Virus record (IMG/VR): IMGVR_UViG_3300036766_002181
Location: 1-64,000 of that record
Length of the DNA stretch: 64,000 nucleotides
Reading direction: 5' to 3' (one strand)
Under the pieces are notes generated by a model. That model saw only the letters and a program-made list of their open reading frames with translations. It ran no database searches and was not told the DNA's origin. How positions within the stretch are numbered: position 1 is the stretch's first letter; each line of letters opens with the position of its first letter. The position numbers and the translations under genes are program-made. Below are positions 1 to 60,310 of the stretch, piece after piece.

Positions 1-453
1 GTTGTCATTGGAACAAACGGGGGAGATGCCTATGCCTGTTTAGAAATGATGGATGCAATAAAAAGCTGTTCGGTGAAGGTTGCTACCATTGTTGAAGGCA
101 AGGCTTTTTCTGCTGGTGCCTTTTTGTTTTCCTGTGGAGCAGAGGGCCACAGATATATGGCCCCAAATGCAACTCTAATGATTCACCCACTTTCCATGGA
201 AAGTTTTGGATCAATTGGGGCTGTTAAAACCTCTACAGAAGAAGGCGACAGACTTAATGAAAAATTATTTAAGATGTTATCAAAGAATTGCAATAAACCA
301 GAAAGCTACTTTTTTGACAAATTAAAGTCAGACTATTTTAGTGCCGAATGGTACCTGGATCCAAAAGAGGCCGTTCGACACAATCTGACAAATCATATGA
401 AGGTACCCTTCTTTACAGTTGACGTTGGCATGACCTACAAATTTGGTCTATAA
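1..453 (+). CDS. clpP: ClpP-like serine protease, 5' end truncated by the window
   Basis: Frame is open from base 1 (VVIGTNGGDAYACLEMMDAI). ClpP motifs: GG loop, AFSAG (catalytic Ser), RYMAPNATLMIH (catalytic His), WYLDPKEA. Confidence 0.9.
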   Translation, partial: VVIGTNGGDAYACLEMMDAIKSCSVKVATIVEGKAFSAGAFLFSCGAEGHRYMAPNATLMIHPLSMESFGSIGAVKTSTEEGDRLNEKLFKMLSKNCNKPESYFFDKLKSDYFSAEWYLDPKEAVRHNLTNHMKVPFFTVDVGMTYKFGL

Positions 454-1847: not shown

Positions 1848-2363
1848 ATGATCAAAAGAAGACAGCCGAACAACGATTCTTTAATAGGCAATTTGGTTAA
1901 AATAAAACATAATAATGACAAAAAAGGAATGGATATTGTTATGACCGTGTTTAATGCCCTACCCAATATAAAAGACAAATGGGACAAGGAAGAGGCAGAA
2001 AGGGAAATATCCTCAGAAGAGATTACAAGCGGGATAGCAAGGGATCTTGCCACAATTGTTTATTTTTCAGCAATGCCAATTGATTTAATTAAAGAAGAAG
2101 ACCTGTTTTTTAATGATTTTTCTCGTGGACTAAGTTCAGAAGAATTAGAAAGATTTGAAAATATAAAAAAAGAATCCTATGCCATGATTGTCGGCGGCCC
2201 GATCAAAAAGATTTTACCATTTTTAAATTGGGAAACCGTTTTAAATTCTCTAGAGCAGCAACAACAAGAGAATAATGGGCCTGTTGTTTTTTATAAATTG
2301 CTTTTAAACAATAGGCTATATTGGGTTTGTGATACCTGTTTAATCTTCGATAATTTGAAATAG
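1848..2363 (+). CDS. Hypothetical protein
   Basis: Open frame with genome-like codon usage; ATG at 1848 directly after the palindrome. Confidence 0.7.
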   Translation: MIKRRQPNNDSLIGNLVKIKHNNDKKGMDIVMTVFNALPNIKDKWDKEEAEREISSEEITSGIARDLATIVYFSAMPIDLIKEEDLFFNDFSRGLSSEELERFENIKKESYAMIVGGPIKKILPFLNWETVLNSLEQQQQENNGPVVFYKLLLNNRLYWVCDTCLIFDNLK

Positions 2364-2837
2364 TTTAATTCCTGTAGAGGATGCAACCAAAAATGGCTCC
2401 CTATCCTCGTGAGCCTTAAGAAAGTAAATTTTCTTAATGCCGGAATTGGCAATAATCTTAAAACAATTCCAACATGGAGAAACCGTAACAAACATTTCTG
2501 CCTTATTGATGCTGGTTCCATTTCTTGCTGCCTGGGCAATGGCATTTTGTTCAGCATGCACGTCCCTGGAATAGGAAGAATTCTTACTCAGTTTATGACC
2601 ATGGGTGTTGCAATGAGGAAGACCTGAAATTGCTCCATTGTATCCTGTAGAAAGAATTGTTTTGTCTCTTACAATGACAGCACCCACTTGAAGCTTAGAG
2701 CAGGTAGATCTGGTAGAAATGACCCTTGCCAGATTCATGAAGTATTTTTCCCAAGAAATTCTCATTGGTGCAGGTGGTGGTGGTGGTGGTGGTGGTTGCT
2801 GCTGTTGAGCCCTTTTCTTTATTTTTGACACATTCAT
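2340..2837 (-). CDS. comEB: dCMP deaminase (ComEB-like); core probably starts at Met 2765
   Basis: SWEKYF, STCSKLQVGAVIV, GYNG, HAEQNAI, SPCWNC zinc-deaminase motifs. Confidence 0.92.
   Translation of the reverse strand: MNVSKIKKRAQQQQPPPPPPPPAPMRISWEKYFMNLARVISTRSTCSKLQVGAVIVRDKTILSTGYNGAISGLPHCNTHGHKLSKNSSYSRDVHAEQNAIAQAARNGTSINKAEMFVTVSPCWNCFKIIANSGIKKIYFLKAHEDREPFLVASSTGIKLFQIIED
2773..2796. repeat. (GGT)8 trinucleotide tract encoding poly-Pro, next to a CAG-rich poly-Gln stretch
   Basis: Eight perfect GGT units; reads QQQQPPPPPPPPAP on the minus strand. Confidence 0.95.
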
Positions 2838-2869
2838 ATATTAATATGGGTAAAATATAAAATAAACTG

Positions 2870-2877
2870 ATATTTAT
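2870..2877 (+). promoter_or_regulatory. Putative late-promoter motif ATATTTAT
   Basis: GATATTTATATG directly before ATG 2882; the same 12-mer precedes the terminase gene. Confidence 0.5.
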
Positions 2878-2881
2878 ATGC

Positions 2882-3424
2882 ATGGCAATAAAAACAAGAA
2901 TCACATCAAAGGGCATAATTCAAGAACATACTTCTGATATTTTATCAGAATTTGATATTGAGGTTAACCAAAAAGAGGGGCAGGCTCTTAGGCGCAGAAC
3001 CCTAGTCATAAGTCATGAAGATTTAACTGCCGATGACACCACCCAAACATTTTCGATGGGCGCGGCGTTCCCGGCGGGGGCGGTGGTTCAAGTCCTCGAT
3101 GTCGATGTAACGGCGGAGATTGTCGGGCTTACTAACCCGCACGTGAGGCTGGGAGTGCTGGGACAGCCGGGCGGCCCTGGCGAGTTTCTTGACTATGTGT
3201 TGGTCACTGACGGCGGCGTATTAGTCCAGCGAAAATCAATGCCGTACGACATTTCCGGGGATCCTCCAGGCAGCTCGAATAATGCTCTTCACGGCAGCAT
3301 CAGCGGCAGAGAGCCGACTGGCACCATCTCCGCCGACAACAACGTCAACAACGCCAGCGCCGGCAGCGTGACGGTGAACATCGTCTACATGCTTGCGGAT
3401 GATGTAACTCAAGACAATGGTTAA
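2882..3424 (+). CDS. Putative virion decoration protein with a GC-rich C-terminal beta-sandwich-like domain
   Basis: N-terminus MAIKTRITSKGII resembles that of 8232..9845; C-terminal FPAGAVV...V.V...VRLGV...GSVTVNIVY pattern resembles capsid cement/decoration folds (by eye). Confidence 0.5.
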   Translation: MAIKTRITSKGIIQEHTSDILSEFDIEVNQKEGQALRRRTLVISHEDLTADDTTQTFSMGAAFPAGAVVQVLDVDVTAEIVGLTNPHVRLGVLGQPGGPGEFLDYVLVTDGGVLVQRKSMPYDISGDPPGSSNNALHGSISGREPTGTISADNNVNNASAGSVTVNIVYMLADDVTQDNG

Positions 3425-3637
3425 TTGTCTTCTATCTCTTTAAAAAATCTATCTAAATTGGCTTCAATATAGCTGTCTATATCAAACGTAGACATGCGGC
3501 GGGGATGTATGGCCATCCCCCCGATAAGATCTCTTTTTGGTTTGGTTCAAACCAAGGTATATACAAATGCTTCCATATGGGCGCATTACACCGTTTTTAT
3601 CAATAGAAATATATAAGTTTCCAGGAACCAATGTCAT
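3421..3637 (-). pseudogene. Frameshifted small L-x-P-G-x-L-Y family gene (not in the ORF track)
   Basis: ATG 3637 gives MTLVPGNLYISIDK...GSICIYLG, which stops at 3482; the +1 frame continues GMAIHPRRMSTFDIDSYIEANLDRFFKEIEDN*, matching the C-terminus of neighbour 3634..3879. Removing one base from the G6 run (3517-3522) restores a 71-aa ORF. Confidence 0.8.
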
Positions 3638-3879
3638 GGTATTTCCTTAAAGGAAAGATTTAGATTATGTGCAGTATAGCTATCTGTTACAAACTCGGAT
3701 ACATACATTGTCTCAACAACAAGCATCCCATGCACAATTCTGTCATGACGTTGATCTTTATAAATTCCAAGATATAGACAAATGCAGCCCTTTGGTCTAT
3801 TAACATAATATCCAAACCTATCAATGGCAACATAGAGATTTCCAGGGATTAATTTTAAATCATTATTATTCATCGCCAT
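3634..3879 (-). CDS. Small hypothetical protein, L-x-P-G-x-L-Y family
   Basis: LKLIPGNLYVAID...GCICLYLG; overlaps both neighbours. Confidence 0.8.
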   Translation of the reverse strand: MAMNNNDLKLIPGNLYVAIDRFGYYVNRPKGCICLYLGIYKDQRHDRIVHGMLVVETMYVSEFVTDSYTAHNLNLSFKEIP

Positions 3880-4129
3880 TTATCTCCTTAAAGTATTTAT
3901 CAAGGTTTTTATTTGTTTGGCTGTTTTCAGCAAACTCAGAGATTTTCTGGGATTGGACAAGTAGCATTCTGTGAACAGATCCCTCGTGAAAGGTTAATTC
4001 AATTGGATTATTGAATAATCCAATATACATACAAACCGTTCCCGGAGATCTTCGAAGCATATAACCATGCCCCGCAAGACCGGGATTGGTGGCAGCATAT
4101 AATTTTCCTGGAATGAGTCTTTTAATCAT
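3866..4129 (-). CDS. Small hypothetical protein, L-x-P-G-x-L-Y family
   Basis: KRLIPGKLYAA...GTVCMYIG...NLDKYFKEI; paralog of the adjacent genes. Confidence 0.8.
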   Translation of the reverse strand: MIKRLIPGKLYAATNPGLAGHGYMLRRSPGTVCMYIGLFNNPIELTFHEGSVHRMLLVQSQKISEFAENSQTNKNLDKYFKEINGDE

Positions 4130-4371
4130 AACACTTTACTGTAAAATTTAGGAATATCCATTGGCGAAACAACCTTACGAAATGATCTGCCCTTGCAACA
4201 GTCATAAAAAACATATACATGCACAAGGTTGTTGAAATTACTAGGGCCTTTCAAAAGGCAAACTATAGTATTTGCGTTAATGCTTATGGTTTTGCCGTCC
4301 ATAGACCAACCATATAACAAATAATGAGTTCGATATAGATCGCCCTTAACAAGGGCCACTGTGTTTGTCAT
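4126..4371 (-). CDS. Small hypothetical protein, L-x-P-G-x-L-Y-like
   Basis: VALVKGDLYRT; 4-nt overlaps with both neighbours. Confidence 0.7.
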   Translation of the reverse strand: MTNTVALVKGDLYRTHYLLYGWSMDGKTISINANTIVCLLKGPSNFNNLVHVYVFYDCCKGRSFRKVVSPMDIPKFYSKVL

Positions 4372-4646
4372 AGTGAAATTATCTTGGCATTGTCAATAAG
4401 ATTTTGTTCTAACCAAGAACCTCTTACAACATAGTATATTTCTTTTTTGCCAATCAAATAAATCTTCCAACAACCATTGTGTTCGGTTGAATCAAACTCC
4501 TTGCCCAAAACAATAAAGGGTTCCTGGTTTCTAAACTTGTATCCTGCCGCCTCAGAATCCACAATTGTATAAATCTCACCAAGCTTAAACTTTATGGGAT
4601 TTGGTTGACTTGCGGGGCCTGTTTCAGGACGAAGAACCAAGGCCAT
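4368..4646 (-). CDS. Small hypothetical protein, related to the same family
   Basis: FKLGEIYTIV...FIVLG; coupled overlap with the downstream gene. Confidence 0.7.
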   Translation of the reverse strand: MALVLRPETGPASQPNPIKFKLGEIYTIVDSEAAGYKFRNQEPFIVLGKEFDSTEHNGCWKIYLIGKKEIYYVVRGSWLEQNLIDNAKIISL

Positions 4647-5664
4647 ATCCCCGTTCCCTTACAATTGCCTTAACCTGTTCAAGATACTCCTCATGAAATG
4701 CCCAGGTCTTTGTTGCAGGATTATAACGACGACCAGAATTGTCGGTAAGATTCTTAAACCTGTTAATCATGCCATACATCGCAGCATCAGGAGCATACCA
4801 GGGACAAAAAACCGTAAACCAGCTTCCAGCACGGGCCCCATAGACAGGAGCCTTGCTTTCAAGCGGCACAGTAAAGGTGGCAATTGGTTCACGACAAGAG
4901 AGAAGACGTTCAGGAGGAGGAGGAGCAGAGGCGGCAACATTGTCTGATAGTCCCTTTGTACGAGCCTCTTCTGCAATGGCCTCTATGTCTCCATCAATGA
5001 AGGGCCAGTAGCGCAAGGCAATCTCAATGAATCTGTCAGCATGCACAACCGAGGCCCTACAGGGCGTCCTGTCGCCACGATACCGGGGAGTGATGATGCC
5101 AGGAATGCTACGACGAAAGGCCCGCCAGCCATCCTTGGAGGACTTGCCAGACAAAACAATGTCGTTTCCTTCAATGGTCAATACGGCAGGAGTCATGCAA
5201 ACATCGCCCTTAAGAACACCGGCAAGGGCAGCATAACCAATGGCTTCGATAATATCGATTGCACGATTCCTAACAATCGTGGAGCAAGGAAAGGAAAGGG
5301 CACGATCAAACCAATCGGCAACAAAGCGCCAATCTCCACCACTAACCATGACACGAGTAATATCAGGATTCCGAGTCTGGGTTCGGGCAAGCTGGTGAAG
5401 AAACTTGATCTTAAGCCCCTCCTCAAATTCTGAGGCAACCTCAGAATGAAAATCTTGTTCAGGATCAAAAGACAAAAGCAGGGCAGCAGCCTTGGTCAGA
5501 TTGGCAGGCATCTGCCGAGCAAAGATTGCATTGTCCTTATGCCTGCAAACTGGACCCACCCCGTTCTCCCTAGAGGCAGCATCCGTCAATTCCTTACGAC
5601 AACGAGAACAGGCCCGGTAAACACTATCAGAAAACCGTCCAGCGGTGTTTTGATGAAAAGTCAT
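4624..5664 (-). CDS. DUF6011-like zinc finger plus C-terminal HARP-like domain protein
   Basis: N-terminal CSRCRKELTDAASRENGVGPVC; C-terminal PWY...INRFKNL...RRYNPATKTWAF resembles HARP domains. Confidence 0.65.
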   Translation of the reverse strand: MTFHQNTAGRFSDSVYRACSRCRKELTDAASRENGVGPVCRHKDNAIFARQMPANLTKAAALLLSFDPEQDFHSEVASEFEEGLKIKFLHQLARTQTRNPDITRVMVSGGDWRFVADWFDRALSFPCSTIVRNRAIDIIEAIGYAALAGVLKGDVCMTPAVLTIEGNDIVLSGKSSKDGWRAFRRSIPGIITPRYRGDRTPCRASVVHADRFIEIALRYWPFIDGDIEAIAEEARTKGLSDNVAASAPPPPERLLSCREPIATFTVPLESKAPVYGARAGSWFTVFCPWYAPDAAMYGMINRFKNLTDNSGRRYNPATKTWAFHEEYLEQVKAIVRERGYGLGSSS

Positions 5665-8231: not shown

Positions 8232-9845
8232 TTAATCGTCAAAGAAGAAAGCCTTTGCATCATATTGGATATTCAGGGTATGCATATCATTATCAGCCGC
8301 CCCGGAAACCGCAAATGTCAATCCTGTTCCGCCTTCACCAATAGGCTCGATAATGTTAAATGCTTCCGGCGTATTTCCAAAAGAGGTACTAATAACCTGA
8401 ACAGGATTGTTGGCAAACATGTAAATTGTCCCAATAGAATCAAGATTCCCGATAGGGCCAGTAGCATGGGCATTATAATTTATTATTGCACCTTGATAAT
8501 CATCTGCATCAGATGATCCAAATAGCCTATCTGTTTCAAACCAGGCAACCAAGTCAGAACCCTTTACAGATAGGTTCTCACCGCCAGAGAAATTTTTAAT
8601 TTTTCTACCATTAAGATTAAACTTTGTTATATCTCCTTTGGCAGCCCCAACCTTAAAACTTGCCAGGCAATTGCTGCCATCATTGAGAGCCACGTTTCCT
8701 GAAGCCTCAATGGGATCTACCTCAAGGGTGAAATAATTTGGTTTTGTAAGATAATCAAGAGATTTAAAACCCTCTCCGTCAGCACCCATGTCGCCACGAA
8801 GATAAAAATTATTGGCACCACCATTATTAACAAACATCGCAAATATAGATCCGGTATAGGCAACAAGATATTGATTGCTATTTGGACCAAATGCAATGCT
8901 TCCTGTTACAAGGGTTCCAGAGGCATATGGAATTGCCTTAAGATATTCTGTATTTAGAATATTTCCGTTGTCGTATTGATCATCTCCACCATCATCAATA
9001 TTGTTTCGATTATAATCAGCATAAAGATCAAAATCAAAATTTTGATAAAGAGAGGATGTTAACGATGCAATAAGGGCCTCATAGGTTCCAGATAAATAAA
9101 ACTTGCTGGCGACCGATTCAAGATCTGTGTCAATTACAGGAGCCCCTCCATACAAAACATGATCAACATAGCTATGAAAAAATGAGGTTAATTGATCTGT
9201 CGAATAGGGGCTTGCACTTCCGGTTCCATAAAGAACAACATAATGAAATCCCCCTGTTCCTCTAAGACCCTCAATGCTCAGGTCATCTGAATTTGTATCC
9301 TGAGAAATCTTGGCAGGCAGACGCCTTGAATCAAAATACATAAAAAGCTGATTAACACTAGGATCATCGCCCCAGAATCTACAAGAAATCGCATTAACAC
9401 CTCGATACATATGATTGGAATCATTATCACATTCAATGGTTTTAACATCAAAAATTCCACCAATGGATTCATTATCGGCCTTATGAAGGTCTAGTTCATA
9501 TTTTGTGCCATTTTCAGCATTGCTTCTTAGGTTAAAGAAAAACTTTGATAAATCTTTTCCATCGGACGATTCGGCATTAAGTTTAATCTTCTCTATGTTA
9601 AAAAAATCAACACCATCCTGTTCGGGATTTTCTGAATAAACCTCGAATTCAACATTTCCTGTATTTCCTTCGCCAACAAGGCCTTGAGTCCAACTCTCTT
9701 GTTCAAACCCTGTACCGCCTATTTCTTCGCCGTCAATTGTGACAGGGCCCTCGATTTCTAAGATTGGAAGATTTGAACCTTCAGGAACCGTATCTGTAAC
9801 AACTCCACGATTTGCCGATATTCTTGTTCTTGTTTTGATAGACAT
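8232..9845 (-). CDS. Putative virion-associated protein (537 aa)
   Basis: Gly/Ser/Asn/Asp-rich, beta-type composition; N-terminus MSIKTRTRISANRGVV shared with 2882..3424; ATATTTAT motif upstream. Confidence 0.6.
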   Translation of the reverse strand: MSIKTRTRISANRGVVTDTVPEGSNLPILEIEGPVTIDGEEIGGTGFEQESWTQGLVGEGNTGNVEFEVYSENPEQDGVDFFNIEKIKLNAESSDGKDLSKFFFNLRSNAENGTKYELDLHKADNESIGGIFDVKTIECDNDSNHMYRGVNAISCRFWGDDPSVNQLFMYFDSRRLPAKISQDTNSDDLSIEGLRGTGGFHYVVLYGTGSASPYSTDQLTSFFHSYVDHVLYGGAPVIDTDLESVASKFYLSGTYEALIASLTSSLYQNFDFDLYADYNRNNIDDGGDDQYDNGNILNTEYLKAIPYASGTLVTGSIAFGPNSNQYLVAYTGSIFAMFVNNGGANNFYLRGDMGADGEGFKSLDYLTKPNYFTLEVDPIEASGNVALNDGSNCLASFKVGAAKGDITKFNLNGRKIKNFSGGENLSVKGSDLVAWFETDRLFGSSDADDYQGAIINYNAHATGPIGNLDSIGTIYMFANNPVQVISTSFGNTPEAFNIIEPIGEGGTGLTFAVSGAADNDMHTLNIQYDAKAFFFDD

Positions 9846-9877: not shown

Positions 9878-9885
9878 ATAAATAT
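9878..9885 (-). promoter_or_regulatory. Putative late-promoter motif ATATTTAT
   Basis: In the short intergenic gap, 32 nt upstream of ATG 9845. Confidence 0.45.
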
Positions 9886-9919: not shown

Positions 9920-10246
9920 TTAACTTATTTTAATAAATAATTTGGCCGTTTTATTGGCCTTAACATACCATTTATTGGCTGGCATATTACAAACCTTGCC
10001 ATCAGACAAGTTTAATACCTTTATAAAGTACATGTCTTCAATTCTTCTAACTCCCAAATAAACCAGATAGATAGAAGAAGTGCCATGCTCGCCGGATAAC
10101 AGAGTAACCTTCTCGTTGCCGTAATAGTAATTGTTTAATACCTCTAGATCATCGCCGCAAATCAGAGTTACACGCTCCTGGCTTGGTATTTTATAGATTT
10201 CTCCCAAAACAAGATCTTTAAGAAACCTTGGTTTAAAAAATGTCAT
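9920..10246 (-). CDS. Small hypothetical protein, PG/LY family-like
   Basis: DLVLGEIYKIP...YLVYLG. Confidence 0.7.
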   Translation of the reverse strand: MTFFKPRFLKDLVLGEIYKIPSQERVTLICGDDLEVLNNYYYGNEKVTLLSGEHGTSSIYLVYLGVRRIEDMYFIKVLNLSDGKVCNMPANKWYVKANKTAKLFIKIS

Positions 10247-10250
10247 AAAC

Positions 10251-10472
10251 CTATCGGTCTGTTAATCTTGAAAATTGTTCTTTTATGTAGGCCTTGTTTG
10301 TTCTATATTTTGTATTGTTGGCAAAAAAGAGGACATCCTCAAATTTGTTATAAACTCCAATAAAAAGACAAATCTGACCTGCCTTACAGACTACATCAGA
10401 GGAAAACGAATCAATTGCCTCAAGGCCCTCGTAACGAATCAAATCTCCTGGTTTTAGGCTATCATGAATCAT
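10251..10472 (-). CDS. Small hypothetical protein, PG family (KOW/SH3-like start)
   Basis: SLKPGDLIRY...GQICLFIG. Confidence 0.7.
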   Translation of the reverse strand: MIHDSLKPGDLIRYEGLEAIDSFSSDVVCKAGQICLFIGVYNKFEDVLFFANNTKYRTNKAYIKEQFSRLTDR

Positions 10473-14230: not shown

Positions 14231-17200
14231 CTAGTCTCGACCAAACATCCATCTAAAAGGATCCCAGACCTGATTGTTGTAGTCGTGAACCTGGCGGCTA
14301 TTAAGCCCCCTGTGGGCCTCTGAGTCAAGATGCTTCCTATACTCGGTTGATCCAGGGGTTGCCCTTGTAACAGGCGAAGGAAGCGAGAAGAAGCCATCTG
14401 AAGTCTTTCCTGTAAGTGGATTTAAAACCCTTGTCTCGACAGACATACCCTTAACGAGAGCCCATTGAGCCTCTGTGTTTTGAAACTGGTTTCTACCAGA
14501 TGCCTCAAACAAGTCGCAGCCGATTGCAAGGCTATTTCCACTCCATACGGCTTTGCCATTTCTTTTTACAAAAAGAGTATGATTTTTATCCAGAATTAAA
14601 CAACCAACCTTTCCAGTATAAAACTGTTTTGTAGCCTGATTTTTTTCATGATGATTTATTCTTGGTTCGTTATGTCTTCGAGATATTGAAACAATATGAG
14701 TTTGATGTTTGCTACGAATTGTTCTTCCATTAATTGTTCCGCCAGTTTGTTTAAGATAGTTTGGGGGCGTAAGAACAATGGAGCTTAATCTAAGCTTTAA
14801 GACAAGCTCGACAACATCTGCTGCCAGGCCTGGGCTTGTTGTAACGTAGTTTGTTAATTCTCCCTTTTTGTTTCTACAACCATCACCTAAAAACAAACCT
14901 AAAAACAATTGTTCTAAAGCCGGGATGTCAAGATCAAGAAATTCTCTTGGTATTCTTTTCGTCGGGGCTATTCCCGGTACAAGGGCCTTTATAAACGTTG
15001 CCAGCCTTGTGTCCATTATTTCAAAACTATTATTTTGTGGCCTATATGCGTAACTGACACCAAGATCGCTTAATCTTTCCAAAAGCTCTTGCATGGGAAT
15101 ATATGCTTTTGATTTATAGCACTGACTTAAAAACAGACGATTTTTATTGCCACTTCCCTCAGATATAAAAAAACCTAAAAGCAACATAAAATCTTTCATT
15201 GGTAGTATTAGGTTTGGTTTTTTTCTTCCATTTTTGGAAGAAAAACCAGGAATTGTTATTGATTCTCTTTTATTACCTTGCCAATTATCTATATTTCTCT
15301 TTAAGCGAAAATGCTTTCCGGTAAGTTTTTCTGCTTCAACAAAGCTCCACGGACGATATGTGTTACCACCGGCACTAACTGAAACAAGCATTCTATGATT
15401 TTCGGTCACAAGCAAATCGACTTGTCTTGTATGGAAATTGATCATCGGCCGATCTACAACAAATTTGTCAACTGTTTCTAAATTGGTTGCCAATTCAAGG
15501 TTTCCAGTTTTTATGTTTAATGAATAAACCATGTCTCCTGACTTTACATCGGAGAAATACTTCCAGCCTTTTTCTGTTAAAACCTCTGTTTCTTGATCGT
15601 AACACATTACAAGATCATCATTTTTTCCTTTGATGGCCTGTGGCTTGTTTCTTTTCCAAATAAAGGTTTGAAGTTCTTCAAAAAGTCTTTTTGAATAAAC
15701 CTTAAGAAAACCATTTCTAAGATTATTTTCAAGCTTTGCCAAGATTTCTTCTCTTGTTCTTTGATTAACTGTTAGGCCAGGAAAATCATTTGGGCCCACC
15801 TCGTTAGAGACATAGGTCATATAAATGTTTTTTTGAAATTTCTCATAAAATAACTTTGGATAGGCGGCCTCTTTAAGTTTTTGGGCGCAGGCAACTCCAA
15901 CGCTGTTAAGTTCCTGACAAATCATGGCCGTGTTATATTGCCTGCCATATTGCATCAAAATTTCTGCAAATTCATCTGGTGGATTTTTTCCTTGAAAGTC
16001 TGCAACAACTTCTTCGGCGGTTGTATCAATAACATGAAATGCAGAAAAATCTTCTCCATCCCCTCTTGCAACGTCTCCAGAAACGATGTACTCGTGTCCT
16101 GGTTCAGGATACTTCCAAATCCACGTTTCATAACGTCCGTGTGCCCTTCTTTCTATTGGTTCCTTTACAGCCAACATAATTTTTTCAAGGGCCTCGCCTT
16201 TTAAAAATGTATCACCTGATGCTTGATAGAGGCAGTTGTGAACTATTAAACTATCTGCAATATAAGAATGATCGTCTTCGACTTCAAGATTATAAACCAT
16301 CTTGCCGCCCGCTTTAAGAGTAGCTTTTTGATATTGAAACCCACCAACAAAATATTCTTTTGGCAAAAGAAAGCTACGAGACGTTGGCCTGTCCAAAAAT
16401 TCTTTTGTATGTACCTGGTCTGTTAGTGTAAAAATATTTCTTTTTTTAGGATCTTTGATTTTTGTTAAACCATCAAATTCAAGATAAGATGGTTCATTAT
16501 TCCAGTAGCCAATTCTAGTGTAATGCCCAAATAACGAAAGAAAAGTTCTAAGCTGATAAAGCATTTTTTCAGACTTGCAAACAACTTTTAACTTATTGTC
16601 AAGATCGTGAAAAAATGGATGATCTCCATCTCCTTCAAAGTGACCAACGATTAGGCCTCGTATAAATTCTTTATTTGTTTTTATAATATTTTCCATATTA
16701 TAATGTTTTGTTCGAGCGTCACCATCATAAATAAAATGTCTTATAAGTGCTCTAGCAAACCTATTGCTACTCAAAATAACATAACATTTCGAATAGGATC
16801 TTTTACAATCAAAATAATTGTAACCAAGATTTGATAAATAATCTCGACAAAACTTACCAAGAGTATCGATTTCTTGGTGGTGGAAAGCCAGGCCGACTAC
16901 GTTATGTCTTACATGGCCTTCTGCGGCGCACAAACCAATAAACCGTCCCAAATTAAAATCAATTGGTATGTATCTTTTTGTTTTTAAACAACTCTTTTGC
17001 CTTGAATATTTTACAAAATTATCTGTTACGGTCTTATTGGCTACGTCGAATTGTGCTAAATCAATATATTTTTTCTTCCTTGAATTGTCTTCTAGTATGT
17101 TTTCAAATTGAAGATGTGGAAAAAGGCATCCGTAGATTACTCTTCGAGTGTGGTTTGTTTCATGCTTCCATAAAAGCAGGTCATCCAAAGATTCAAATTT

Positions 17201-18274
17201 ATTCTCAACCAAAAGATTTTTATGAAGTTTTCTAAAGTGCTTTTTATTGTTTTTTCCCTTTGGGACTTTAAAGGCATAGTTCAAAATTGGATGATTTCCT
17301 GTAATTAAAATATCGTTTTTTCTATTTCCTGGGGTTGAAACAGAATATAGGTTTTCATGTTCGCCAATTTGACGACAATAGGTTTTTTCAACTTTTTTAA
17401 ATCGTCCCTTGTGAGTTAAAACCAGATCCCCAATTTCAATATCCTTTATTTTTTTACAGCCATTTGAAGTTATTATGTTGGTATCTGGTCCCACACATAA
17501 TAATTCCTGCGCCACTCCCATCTCACCTTTTGCCTGGAGAAGGGCTTTTCTTTCTCTTTGAAACCACTTCTCATCTCGTTCAGGATGAACATGCCATGGA
17601 AGCTCAATTGAATGAAAACCATTCTCTCCCTGTTTGGCTCCTATCCATAGATCATAAAACAATCCTTGGGCTCCATTTGGTGTTGAAATAAAAATAACAG
17701 AGCCGCCGTTTGAAAGGGTTGGTTGCAAGCCAAGCCATAGGTCTGAAACGCCCTCAATATGTGCAGCCTCGTCAATAATCATAAGACTTAAGCTTTCAGA
17801 ACGACCTGCATCTGCCGAGGTTGGAATTGCCTTTATCTTTGAACCATTGCTAAAGCTTAAAGATTTTTTTGTATCCTCTGTAAGCTTTGGCATAACAAGC
17901 CAGTCGGGAAGATGATCAAGGGCTGTTCTTACTTTTCTTATGAAGTTCTGGGCCGTGTCTAGCTTGGTAGCAACAACAAGAATGTTTTTCTCTCTCTGAA
18001 ACAGTGCCAACCAGAGGGCATAGGCTGCTGAAGCCGTAGACAATCCAAGTTGTCTGCTTTTATTAACAATTACATACCTGTGTTTTTGAAATGCCTCTAG
18101 GCAGTCTTCCTGATAGGGAAAGGTATGAAACTTAACAAGGCCCTTTTTGGGATGGGATATTTTGACGTATTTGTTTGTGAAATACTTTACGTCAGTACCA
18201 CACTTATAAATCTCTTCGGTTTGTTCTTTCTTATTTGGCCAATAAGAACTTTCTTGGGATTTCAGCTTTGCCAT
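14231..18274 (-). CDS. terL: Terminase large subunit (T4 gp17-like) with two inteins; about 569 aa after splicing
   Basis: Walker A KSRQLGLST, Walker B LMIIDEAAH, motif III ISTPNG, nuclease SGDVARG and DDLVM/SLAI. Confidence 0.95.
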   Translation of the reverse strand: MAKLKSQESSYWPNKKEQTEEIYKCGTDVKYFTNKYVKISHPKKGLVKFHTFPYQEDCLEAFQKHRYVIVNKSRQLGLSTASAAYALWLALFQREKNILVVATKLDTAQNFIRKVRTALDHLPDWLVMPKLTEDTKKSLSFSNGSKIKAIPTSADAGRSESLSLMIIDEAAHIEGVSDLWLGLQPTLSNGGSVIFISTPNGAQGLFYDLWIGAKQGENGFHSIELPWHVHPERDEKWFQRERKALLQAKGEMGVAQELLCVGPDTNIITSNGCKKIKDIEIGDLVLTHKGRFKKVEKTYCRQIGEHENLYSVSTPGNRKNDILITGNHPILNYAFKVPKGKNNKKHFRKLHKNLLVENKFESLDDLLLWKHETNHTRRVIYGCLFPHLQFENILEDNSRKKKYIDLAQFDVANKTVTDNFVKYSRQKSCLKTKRYIPIDFNLGRFIGLCAAEGHVRHNVVGLAFHHQEIDTLGKFCRDYLSNLGYNYFDCKRSYSKCYVILSSNRFARALIRHFIYDGDARTKHYNMENIIKTNKEFIRGLIVGHFEGDGDHPFFHDLDNKLKVVCKSEKMLYQLRTFLSLFGHYTRIGYWNNEPSYLEFDGLTKIKDPKKRNIFTLTDQVHTKEFLDRPTSRSFLLPKEYFVGGFQYQKATLKAGGKMVYNLEVEDDHSYIADSLIVHNCLYQASGDTFLKGEALEKIMLAVKEPIERRAHGRYETWIWKYPEPGHEYIVSGDVARGDGEDFSAFHVIDTTAEEVVADFQGKNPPDEFAEILMQYGRQYNTAMICQELNSVGVACAQKLKEAAYPKLFYEKFQKNIYMTYVSNEVGPNDFPGLTVNQRTREEILAKLENNLRNGFLKVYSKRLFEELQTFIWKRNKPQAIKGKNDDLVMCYDQETEVLTEKGWKYFSDVKSGDMVYSLNIKTGNLELATNLETVDKFVVDRPMINFHTRQVDLLVTENHRMLVSVSAGGNTYRPWSFVEAEKLTGKHFRLKRNIDNWQGNKRESITIPGFSSKNGRKKPNLILPMKDFMLLLGFFISEGSGNKNRLFLSQCYKSKAYIPMQELLERLSDLGVSYAYRPQNNSFEIMDTRLATFIKALVPGIAPTKRIPREFLDLDIPALEQLFLGLFLGDGCRNKKGELTNYVTTSPGLAADVVELVLKLRLSSIVLTPPNYLKQTGGTINGRTIRSKHQTHIVSISRRHNEPRINHHEKNQATKQFYTGKVGCLILDKNHTLFVKRNGKAVWSGNSLAIGCDLFEASGRNQFQNTEAQWALVKGMSVETRVLNPLTGKTSDGFFSLPSPVTRATPGSTEYRKHLDSEAHRGLNSRQVHDYNNQVWDPFRWMFGRD
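14534..15604 (-). mobile_element. Intein 2 in TerL (357 aa) with LAGLIDADG homing endonuclease
   Basis: Begins CYDQETEVLT, ends VWSGN, +1 residue Ser; blocks LLGFFISEGS and FLGLFLGDGC; splicing restores NDDLVMSLAIG. Confidence 0.93.
16235..17497 (-). mobile_element. Intein 1 in TerL (421 aa) with LAGLIDADG homing endonuclease
   Basis: Begins CVGPDTNIIT, ends VYNLEVEDDHSYIADSLIVHN, +1 residue Cys; blocks FIGLCAAEGH and IVGHFEGDGD. Confidence 0.95.
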
Positions 18275-18281
18275 TACCCAT

Positions 18282-18289
18282 ATAAATAT
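18282..18289 (-). promoter_or_regulatory. Putative late-promoter motif ATATTTAT
   Basis: GATATTTATATGGGTAATG directly before the terminase start. Confidence 0.5.
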
Positions 18290-60302: not shown

Positions 60303-60310
60303 ATATTTAT
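60303..60310 (+). promoter_or_regulatory. Putative late-promoter motif ATATTTAT
   Basis: 4 nt before ATG 60315 of the sulfotransferase. Confidence 0.45.

What the first reader, a model, noticed from the sequence alone, without database searches (positions are those of the whole stretch)
2882..3424. Conserved AT-rich N-terminal module fused to a recently swapped high-GC domain
Seen: 60-nt spot counts give about 32% GC at 2881-2940 but about 65-67% at 3061-3120 and 3301-3360, a switch inside one ORF. The N-terminus (MAIKTRITSKGII) matches that of the otherwise unrelated 537-aa protein at 8232..9845 (MSIKTRTRISANRGVV), and both genes have ATATTTAT upstream. Inference: a modular virion display system in which a short anchor peptide carries interchangeable passenger domains, one captured from a GC-rich donor.
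Basis: partly seen in the sequence, partly recalled or inferred. Interest (0 to 1): 0.62.

Follow-up and report, generated by a model that had tools for sequence, protein, structure and literature searches.

The report
Mosaic capsid-cement gene in giant phage
The odd gene is a full-length copy of a phage capsid "cement" (decoration) protein whose GC-rich core looks imported from a GC-rich phage into an AT-rich giant T4-like phage; the supposed shared N-terminal anchor peptide is a chance resemblance.

Summary
The composition switch is real. ORF 2882-3424 (+, 180 aa) is 28% GC over codons 1-31, 59% over 2975-3398 and 31% in the last codons, in a 38.9% GC genome. This is the strongest 5'-versus-rest contrast of 236 genes.

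The GC-rich core is a jelly-roll domain of a large unannotated viral family (162 profile hits). In five head-gene clusters on 51-71% GC contigs its members lie near the protease or capsid gene; others are fused to a cement-type domain. The best solved matches are trimeric capsid cement proteins (Pam1 gp6, KHP30/KHP40, GP4), and a homotrimer is predicted.

The "conserved N-terminal module" fails. MAIKTR/MSIKTR is one of 32 equally good N-terminal pairs and ranks 1160th of 56,953. Residues 13-31, still in the AT-rich part, align co-linearly with the family's own N-terminal arm. The gene is therefore a full-length family member with mosaic composition, not an anchor plus passenger.

ATATTTAT is a real sense-strand upstream motif, but 11 genes have it, including the terminase.

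Elsewhere in the genome, nine unrelated proteins do share a cleavable-looking 17-aa leader beside the T4-like protease and capsid genes.

Verdict: an ordinary horizontally acquired structural gene with an unusual intragenic mosaic.

The parts
2882..3424 (+). 180-aa ORF: a full-length standalone member of an unannotated viral jelly-roll family related to trimeric capsid cement (decoration) proteins. It is a lone plus-strand gene between minus-strand genes.
   Evidence: ORF listing. No Pfam or PHROG match. Nine homologs by exhaustive phmmer and 162 by profile search. Family HMM built without the target aligns residues 13-175. AF2 model pLDDT 75.7. Fold matches to cement proteins. The ATG at 2882 is the only in-frame ATG/GTG/TTG upstream of the conserved residue-37 strand (codon listing).
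2882..2974 (+). AT-rich 5' segment (28% GC, GC3 about 0.2; residues 1-31). Residues 1-12 have no counterpart in the family. Residues 13-31 align co-linearly with the family's N-terminal arm (motif [AS]E.DI...[QE]).
   Evidence: for composition. Searches (PSSM p=0.022, best hit at residues 19-30; the 31 residues alone give E=0.02 at co-linear HMM positions) for homology. pLDDT is low over 1-35, and these residues are outside the predicted trimer interface.
2975..3398 (+). GC-rich core (58.7% GC, GC3 about 0.7; residues 32-172): the jelly-roll domain, with the conserved motifs DLT, (L/F)PAGA and NV..ASAG.VTV..Y.
   Evidence: Profile against PDB: 7EEL_H E=6.7e-4 and 7DN2 E=0.027. VIA-align Z 8.1 to 7dou_4 and 7eel_H. 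Predicted homotrimer interface uses residues 34-180.
3399..3424 (+). AT-rich 3' tail (31% GC; the last 10 codons have GC3 of 0.2) and the stop codon.
2870..2877 (+). ATATTTAT, a sense-strand upstream motif 4 nt before the ATG. It lies in the 44-nt divergent spacer shared with the dCMP deaminase gene.
8232..9845 (-). The 537-aa comparator protein. It is unrelated to the 180-aa protein and is possibly a fibre or baseplate-type virion protein (weak evidence).
   Evidence: No Pfam or PHROG match. One distant relative, a 1426-aa protein on L001 with a different N-terminus. The Atlas gives only weak fibre-like leads. BLASTP against the 180-aa protein finds nothing.
9878..9885 (-). ATATTTAT 32 nt upstream of the 537-aa gene.

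Best explanation
ORF 2882-3424 encodes a standalone jelly-roll protein of the trimeric capsid cement/decoration type. It was acquired horizontally by an AT-rich (38.9% GC), T4-like giant phage from a phage lineage of high GC content.

The gene is a compositional mosaic. The core (codons about 32-172) keeps donor-like GC at synonymous sites. The first 31 codons and the last 10 or so have the resident AT-rich composition. The AT-rich 5' part still aligns with the family's own N-terminal arm. The most likely mechanism is therefore recombination inside a homologous gene: a GC-rich patch laid into an AT-rich copy, or AT-rich ends replacing the ends of an imported gene. An unrelated anchor peptide fused to a passenger domain is not the likely origin.

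Shown here: the composition pattern, family membership, the fold, the head-module context of the homologs, and a predicted trimer.

Inferred: the direction and mechanism of the recombination, and that the product decorates this phage's capsid. If it does, it would sit as trimers at three-fold and quasi-three-fold positions between capsomers, as Pam1 gp6 and KHP30 gp15 do.
For: Composition.

Amino-acid make-up is chimeric too. Residues 1-31 are GARP 0.10 / FYMINK 0.39. Residues 32-172 are 0.30 / 0.17, like the homologs (0.34 / 0.17) and unlike the genome's proteome (0.21 / 0.31).

Family: phmmer gives 9 hits covering query residues 29-175; the profile search gives 162 hits. An HMM built without the target aligns residues 13-175 at 87 bits.

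Homolog loci are 51-71% GC and lack AT-rich starts.

Head context of homologs: next to a Mu-like prohead protease and Phage_cement_2 (L002), directly after the protease (L003), and downstream of the presumed or Pfam-matched capsid gene (L015, L018). Others are fused to phrog_1731 'virion structural protein', PF09956 or PF22758 cement domains.

Solved relatives: profile E=6.7e-4 to Pam1 gp6 (7EEL_H) over nearly the whole domain and 0.027 to KHP30 gp15. Foldseek's top hits are 7dou, 7eel_H, 8h89_J and 7dn2. VIA-align gives Z 8.1 (117 residues aligned, rmsd 3.1) to 7eel_H and Z 8.1 to 7dou_4. These proteins are described as jelly-roll trimers at capsomer interfaces (PMC13730344).

Homotrimer: ipSAE 0.72 against a best control of 0.00; the mark was reached by 20 of 30 solved pairs and 1 of 23 single chains; contact agreement at least 61%; partner pLDDT at least 62.

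The other GC-rich genes of this genome do not have AT-rich starts, so a general 5' AT preference does not explain the pattern.
Against: - The link to solved cement proteins is modest. Foldseek E-values are only 7e-3 to 5e-2. Z 8 is near the typical best score for unrelated models. The sequence hit disappears with the larger profile A3.
- Jelly rolls also occur in tail-fibre tips, and some BFVD and PDB hits are fibre proteins.
- The gene lies about 127 kb from the capsid gene, among nucleotide-metabolism and small multicopy genes. A capsid role in this phage is therefore unproven.
- No AT-rich homolog that could be the resident allele was found.
- The arm homology inside the AT-rich part is only p about 0.02 when tested on its own.
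- No donor is identified. The nearest relative is 38-40% identical and the terminal branch is 1.64.
- Read-level confirmation of the two junctions could not be obtained.
Confidence: 0.6

Rival explanations
1. A short native N-terminal anchor or targeting peptide, shared with the 537-aa protein, carries interchangeable passenger domains, and this one was captured from a GC-rich donor.
For: The composition boundary at residue 32 is close to where most homolog alignments begin (residues 26-37). Residues 1-12 have no family counterpart. The genome does use a shared leader on other proteins. T4-type (I/L)-x-E motifs occur at residues 13-15 and 21-23 (read from the sequence).
Against: The two N-termini are no more alike than chance. 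The leader HMM does not place either protein in its top 30. Residues 13-31 are co-linear with the family's own arm. (I/L)-x-E is expected by chance in about a quarter of 30-residue stretches (own estimate).
Confidence: 0.08
2. The whole gene was imported from a GC-rich phage. Only its ends were then remodelled by mutation, under selection for an A/U-rich, unstructured translation start in a genome that lacks Shine-Dalgarno sites. No second recombination took place.
For: The genome shows no SD signal and has A-rich regions around starts. The N-arm is homologous to that of GC-rich relatives. No AT-rich allele is known.
Against: The AT-rich stretch is 93 nt, far longer than an initiation region. 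It is as AT-rich as, or more AT-rich than, the genome (GC3 0.2 against 0.34). The 3' tail is AT-rich too. The other GC-rich genes keep 46-52% GC in their first 90 nt.
Confidence: 0.2
3. It is a tail-fibre or receptor-binding tip domain, or another jelly-roll adhesin, rather than a capsid cement protein.
For: Fold hits include the Agrobacterium phage 7-7-1 tail fibre (Z 6.9), a vB_DshS-R4C baseplate-tail chain, and BFVD proteins named tail fibre.
Against: The top two matches by both aligners, and the only sequence-profile matches, are cement proteins. All five homolog contexts examined are head modules next to the protease or capsid gene, or fusions to cement domains.
Confidence: 0.1
4. Assembly chimera. 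The metagenomic contig wrongly joins pieces of two different phages' homologous genes.
For: The record is a metagenome-derived IMG/VR contig.
Against: Two in-frame junctions 420 nt apart would be needed inside one ORF, with co-linear homology across the 5' junction. The segments differ by 30 points of GC, so shared k-mers are unlikely. The flanks on both sides belong to the same AT-rich genome.
Confidence: 0.04

Closest known systems
Cyanophage Pam1 gp6 cement protein (PDB 7EEL chain H)
   Same: Jelly roll of about 140 aa. The family profile aligns over nearly its whole length (E=6.7e-4), including the LP.GA.V.GV and GSV.V.V.Y motifs. VIA-align Z 8.1, 117 residues aligned, rmsd 3.1. Described as a trimeric protein at capsomer interfaces (PMC13730344).
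   Different: 13-14% identity. The target has a longer N-terminal arm (32 residues against 17) and a longer loop at residues 100-140. Pam1 is a short-tailed phage, whereas here the host genome is T4-like and far larger.
Helicobacter phage KHP30 gp15 / KHP40 trimeric cement protein (PDB 7DN2, 7DOU)
   Same: Top Foldseek hit (7dou_4, E 7e-3, probability 1.00) and VIA-align Z 8.1. Profile E=0.027 to 7DN2. A trimer, as predicted here.
   Different: 10-12% identity and a shorter protein (124-126 aa). The sequence link is below the usual significance level.
Ralstonia phage GP4 capsid auxiliary chain (PDB 8H89 chain J)
   Same: Fold match: Z 6.5, 122 residues aligned; Foldseek probability 0.85.
   Different: No sequence-profile hit.
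T4 Soc (small outer capsid protein)
   Same: A functional analogue in the phage group to which this genome belongs: trimers that clamp adjacent capsomers (own knowledge; PMC3012670 reviews the T4 head).
   Different: An unrelated fold and family. No Soc (PF16855) was found in the held 57% of this genome, but that search rang nowhere, the control genomes included, so it shows nothing.
T4 capsid targeting sequence (CTS) of internal proteins
   Same: The genome has a look-alike leader, MKITKxQLKxxIKEE, on 9 unrelated proteins.
   Different: The 180-aa and 537-aa proteins do not carry that leader.

Membership tests
Trimeric jelly-roll capsid cement/decoration proteins (Pam1 gp6, KHP30 gp15, GP4, BPP-1 type) | Single jelly-roll beta-sandwich of about 125-155 residues | tested here: met
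   AF2 model with 8 strands over residues 37-171 and pLDDT of 87-97 in the core blocks. The best matches by both aligners are cement proteins.
Trimeric jelly-roll capsid cement/decoration proteins (Pam1 gp6, KHP30 gp15, GP4, BPP-1 type) | Detectable sequence relationship to a solved cement protein | tested here: inconclusive
   Profile A2 gives 7EEL_H at E=6.7e-4 and 7DN2 at E=0.027. The larger profile A3 loses both. There are no Pfam cement-family hits on the target.
Trimeric jelly-roll capsid cement/decoration proteins (Pam1 gp6, KHP30 gp15, GP4, BPP-1 type) | Homotrimer | tested here: met
   Prediction only. ipSAE 0.72 against a best control of 0.00 (the mark was reached by 20 of 30 solved pairs and 1 of 23 single chains). 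Contacts agree in at least 61%, and partner pLDDT is at least 62. The pass may partly reflect likeness to solved trimers.
Trimeric jelly-roll capsid cement/decoration proteins (Pam1 gp6, KHP30 gp15, GP4, BPP-1 type) | Gene lies in the head-morphogenesis module beside the protease or major capsid gene | tested here: not met
   Met for the homologs (L002, L003, L015/L016, L018). The target itself lies about 127 kb from the gp23-like gene, between a dCMP deaminase gene and small multicopy genes.
Trimeric jelly-roll capsid cement/decoration proteins (Pam1 gp6, KHP30 gp15, GP4, BPP-1 type) | Bound on the capsid surface at three-fold or quasi-three-fold positions | not testable with these tools
   Needs virion proteomics or cryo-EM.
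   32 pairs have at least 4 of 6 identities. This pair ranks 1160th of 56,953. BLASTP gives no N-terminal alignment.
CTS-like leader family MKITKxQLKxxIKEE of this genome | Match to an HMM of the 9 leaders | tested here: not met
   The nine members score 28-39 bits. Neither the 2882 protein nor the 8232 protein is among the top 30.
Diversity-generating retroelement variable region | A near-identical template repeat elsewhere in the genome | tested here: not met
   blastn and tblastn of the region against the whole record find only the region itself.

The most novel reading that the evidence does not exclude
A giant T4-like phage has taken up a Pam1/KHP30-type trimeric cement protein through intragenic recombination between alleles that differ by about 30 points of GC. 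A resident AT-rich copy would have kept its own start, N-terminal arm and tail while its whole jelly-roll core was exchanged. That would show that capsid-decoration genes are swapped as sub-gene patches between phages with very different genome composition. It would also show that this cement fold can serve on a T4-type (gp23) lattice in place of Soc.
Probability: 0.2. Interest if true: 0.55.

Novelty: new member of a known kind. Interest (0 to 1): 0.33.

Why it matters
It assigns a probable role (capsid cement/decoration) to an ORFan and to a large unannotated viral family: 162 profile hits, no Pfam model of its own, and Atlas clusters of 59-334 members. It also gives a clean example of a gene whose base composition changes twice within one reading frame. 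That is useful as a marker of sub-gene recombination in phage mosaicism and as a caution for composition-based HGT calls. The by-product may matter more. The same genome carries a T4-CTS-like leader on nine unrelated proteins clustered around the prohead protease, which is a testable set of candidate packaged (injected) proteins in an uncultured giant phage.

Tried and rejected
- Pfam and PHROGs on the 180-aa and 537-aa proteins: no match.
- Word search with the single protein: only itself.
- tblastn of both proteins against 50,697 phage records: no match.
- megablast of 12 kb against the phage records: no match.
- IMG/VR scans with the 180-aa protein and with the neighbouring 178-aa protein: no relatives.
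- The dCMP deaminase gene found only a distant locus, so no syntenic relative was available to date the mosaic.
- Profile scan of IMG/VR: A2 was too variable to use; A5 gave a single locus.
- Self-similarity and DGR-type template repeat: none.
- Rfam over 2300-4000: nothing.
- Sigma-70 promoter and terminator scan: at background level.
- Flanking repeats: one 12-nt perfect inverted repeat whose left arm lies on the change point. The arms are not nested with the second pair, and the right arm lies inside the next gene, so it was judged chance.
- Local alignment of the N-terminal 36 residues against the homologs' arms: not significant (p about 0.1). The motif PSSM and the HMM gave p about 0.02.
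- Soc search: uninformative.
No other route was tried and read laying was not used.
- Other GC-rich genes of the genome (amidoligase, DUF2201 and others) gave no clue to host or donor.

Full report
**Setting.** The window is the first 64 kb of a single 244,715-bp virus record with 38.9% GC. It is classed as linear, and CheckV estimates it to be 57% complete. The genome is T4-like:
- a gp23-family major capsid gene at about 130.4-132.3 kb and a gp21-family (Peptidase_S77) prohead protease at about 136.8-138.6 kb;
- a T4-type large terminase at 14231-18274(-) that carries Hint/LAGLIDADG intein parts.

The terminase's nearest relative among deposited phages is Microcystis phage Mel-JY01, at 47% identity. 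No close relative of the genome was found. Start regions are A-rich and show no Shine-Dalgarno signal.

**The observation: composition.** The composition switch is real and exceptional.
- Change points fall at 2975 and 3398. GC is 58.7% inside, against 34% and 38% outside.
- The highest 300-nt GC value of the whole record lies here.
- The contrast between the first 90 nt and the rest of the gene is the largest of 236 genes: 0.278 against 0.013 +/- 0.066.
- The pattern is strongest at synonymous sites. GC3 per ten codons runs 0.3, 0.1, 0.2 | 0.6, 0.2, 0.6, 0.8, 0.6, 0.8, 0.7, 0.6, 0.5, 0.6, 0.6, 0.8, 1.0, 1.0 | 0.2. Both ends of the gene are therefore resident-like, and only the core is GC-rich.
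- The GC1 > GC2 < GC3 pattern shows that this frame is the coding one.
- Amino-acid make-up is chimeric in the same way.

**The observation: the N-terminal match.** MAIKTRITSKGII against MSIKTRTRISANRGVV is correctly read but is not more than chance. Among 338 crude genes, 32 pairs share at least 4 of 6 residues at positions 2-7. Several of those pairs are plainly unrelated. This pair's local alignment ranks 1160th of 56,953. BLASTP between the two proteins does not align the N-termini (7.4 is the best E-value, elsewhere in the proteins).

**The observation: the upstream motif.** ATATTTAT does precede both genes, at 4 nt and at 32 nt from the start. It is a genuine strand-specific upstream signal:
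- 11 of its 24 copies lie within 60 nt upstream of a gene in the sense orientation;
- the reverse-complement orientation is not enriched;
- shuffled upstream regions give 2.6 +/- 1.6 such copies.

The genes that have it include the terminase and one of the leader-family genes described below. The motif says something about regulation of a class of genes. It says nothing about a special link between these two.

**What the protein is: the family.** Pfam, PHROGs, the word search and tblastn against phage records all left the protein open, so the exhaustive search was used. It found nine distant homologs (E from 1e-9 to 5e-4, 32-44% identity) covering query residues about 29-175. A profile of these found 162 proteins. 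They are either standalone (141-193 aa) or sit C-terminal to a domain that matches phrog_1731 'virion structural protein', PF09956 Phage_cement_2 or PF22758 Phage_cement. The architecture has changed at least seven times on the tree.

**What the protein is: genomic context of the homologs.** All five contexts examined are head modules.
- L002: the homolog lies between a 669-aa gene and a Mu-like prohead protease, followed by Phage_cement_2.
- L003: the order is Mu F, Mu-like protease, then the homolog.
- L015 and L016: the order is portal-MuF, protease, Phage_cement, a 347-aa gene (probably the capsid gene), then the homolog.
- L018: the order is portal, protease, Phage_capsid, a 110-aa gene, then the homolog.

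**What the protein is: structure.**
- The A2 profile matches the cement protein gp6 of cyanophage Pam1 (7EEL_H, E=6.7e-4, nearly full length) and gp15 of KHP30 (7DN2, E=0.027). The larger A3 profile loses these hits.
- The AlphaFold model (pLDDT 75.7) is a jelly roll over residues 37-175, with a poorly defined N-terminal 35 residues.
- Foldseek and the Foldseek-independent aligner both put cement proteins on top: KHP40 7dou and Pam1 7eel_H at Z 8.1, then GP4 8h89_J at Z 6.5. The scores are modest.
- These proteins are described as jelly-roll trimers at hexon-hexon and penton-hexon interfaces that reinforce the capsid (PMC13730344).
- A homotrimer of the target is supported in silico. ipSAE is 0.72 against a best control of 0.00. 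The mark was reached by 20 of 30 solved pairs and 1 of 23 single chains. Contact agreement is at least 61% and partner pLDDT at least 62. The interface uses residues 34-180 only.
- The Atlas places the protein among large unannotated viral clusters.

**Is the N-terminus a separate module?** No. BLASTP against P0111 runs from residue 13. The closest standalone homologs carry an arm motif, AEADIVTLQ-G.RVRK, directly before the domain. The target has SEFDIEVNQ-KEGQALRRR in the same place. Three tests bear on this:
- a PSSM of that motif, built without the target, finds its best hit at residues 19-30 (p=0.022 by shuffling; rank 6 of 338 N-termini);
- an HMM of 13 standalone homologs, also built without the target, aligns residues 13-175;
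- the first 31 residues alone hit the co-linear HMM positions at E=0.02.

The composition boundary therefore lies inside the homologous gene. Only residues 1-12 are without counterpart. The ATG at 2882 is the only in-frame start that keeps the conserved first strand.

**How it most likely arose.** The homolog loci have 51-71% GC, and their genes have no AT-rich start. The other GC-rich genes of this genome also lack AT-rich starts. A general preference for AT-rich 5' ends cannot explain a 93-nt block at GC3 of 0.2 together with an AT-rich tail.

The best reading is sub-gene recombination within a homologous gene. This phage would have acquired a GC-rich core from a high-GC phage while retaining, or later regaining, resident ends. 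I cannot tell the order of events. I found no AT-rich allele and no donor: the nearest relative is 38-40% identical and the target's branch is long. 'Recent' therefore rests on lack of amelioration alone.

An assembly chimera is unlikely, because it would need two in-frame junctions with co-linear homology across the first.

**Function here.** A capsid-decoration role in this phage is an inference. The gene is a lone plus-strand gene among minus-strand genes, far from the head module.

**By-product.** Nine proteins of 89-384 aa begin with MKITKxQLKxxIKEE, always with [ILV]-x-E at residues 12-14. They show no similarity to one another after residue 22. Five of them flank the gp21-like protease and the gp23-like capsid gene. 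This resembles the T4 capsid targeting sequence, by which otherwise diverse internal proteins are taken into the scaffolding core (PMC3012670). That the T4 protease cuts after (L/I)-x-E is my own knowledge.

**Verdict.** This is an ordinary kind of element: a horizontally acquired virion decoration gene and a new member of a cement-like family. It has an unusually clear intragenic composition mosaic. The proposed anchor-peptide display system is not supported for this gene.

Noticed in passing
Outside the window, genome coordinates: 126639-127007(-), 127055-128209(-), 135616-136125(-), 136147-136473(-), 136470-136832(-), 166714-167454(+), 183350-183658(-), 224039-224308(+), 224314-224775(+); loci L006, L007, L008: Nine otherwise unrelated proteins share a 17-aa N-terminal leader, MKITKxQLKxxIKEE, always with [ILV]-x-E at residues 12-14. 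Five of them flank the gp21-like protease and gp23-like capsid genes. This is a T4 capsid-targeting-sequence look-alike, so these are candidate packaged internal proteins.
   Followed up: partly
window 3482-4646(-) and 9920-10472(-); at least 27 genes genome-wide: A multigene family of small (50-150 aa) proteins with an N-terminal (L/F)(I/V)PG.LY motif, arranged in tandem arrays. Five copies sit directly next to the target gene. None has a Pfam match.
   Followed up: partly
window 2870-2877(+), 9878-9885(-), 18282-18289(-), 60303-60310(+), and 7 more sites outside the window: ATATTTAT (extended form: AATATTTAT[AG]T) is a strand-specific motif 4-32 nt upstream of 11 genes, including the large terminase. 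It is too close to many start codons for a normal leader, so it may mark a promoter or start for short-leader mRNAs.
   Followed up: partly
window 14231-18274(-): The large terminase is 1347 aa and carries Hint, Intein_splicing and LAGLIDADG matches, which points to one or two inteins interrupting a T4-type TerL.
   Followed up: partly
whole genome (start regions of 337 crude genes): There is no Shine-Dalgarno enrichment upstream of starts. G stays at or below 0.23 at every position from -30 to -1, and A is 0.4-0.5. This suggests a host or phage system with SD-independent initiation.
   Followed up: partly
window 4624-5664(-): A second GC-elevated gene (50% GC, 346 aa) has a DUF6011 zinc-ribbon-like motif at residues 18-43. 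Other GC-rich genes lie at 157.7, 190.1, 193.3 and 218.1 kb (an amidoligase among them). The genome therefore holds several probably imported genes.
   Followed up: partly
window 2766-2798 (inside the dCMP deaminase gene 2340-2837, minus strand): A (TGG)n trinucleotide run encodes a QQQQPPPPPPPPPP stretch at the N-terminus of the dCMP deaminase.
   Followed up: no
window 2966-2977 and 3531-3542: A perfect 12-nt inverted repeat (AACCAAAAAGAG / CTCTTTTTGGTT). Its left arm lies exactly on the GC change point, and its right arm lies inside the next gene. Probably chance.
   Followed up: partly
genome 128218-130272(-) and 136829-138556(-): The ORF just downstream of the capsid gene starts with a GIY-YIG-like motif (KKGIYKIVNKENGKFYVGSS). 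The gp21-like protease and the gp23-like capsid ORFs match their Pfam models in two separated pieces, which suggests insertions.
   Followed up: no
window 1-453(+): A ClpP-family protease gene is cut by the start of the record. It is present in addition to the T4-type gp21-like prohead protease.
   Followed up: no
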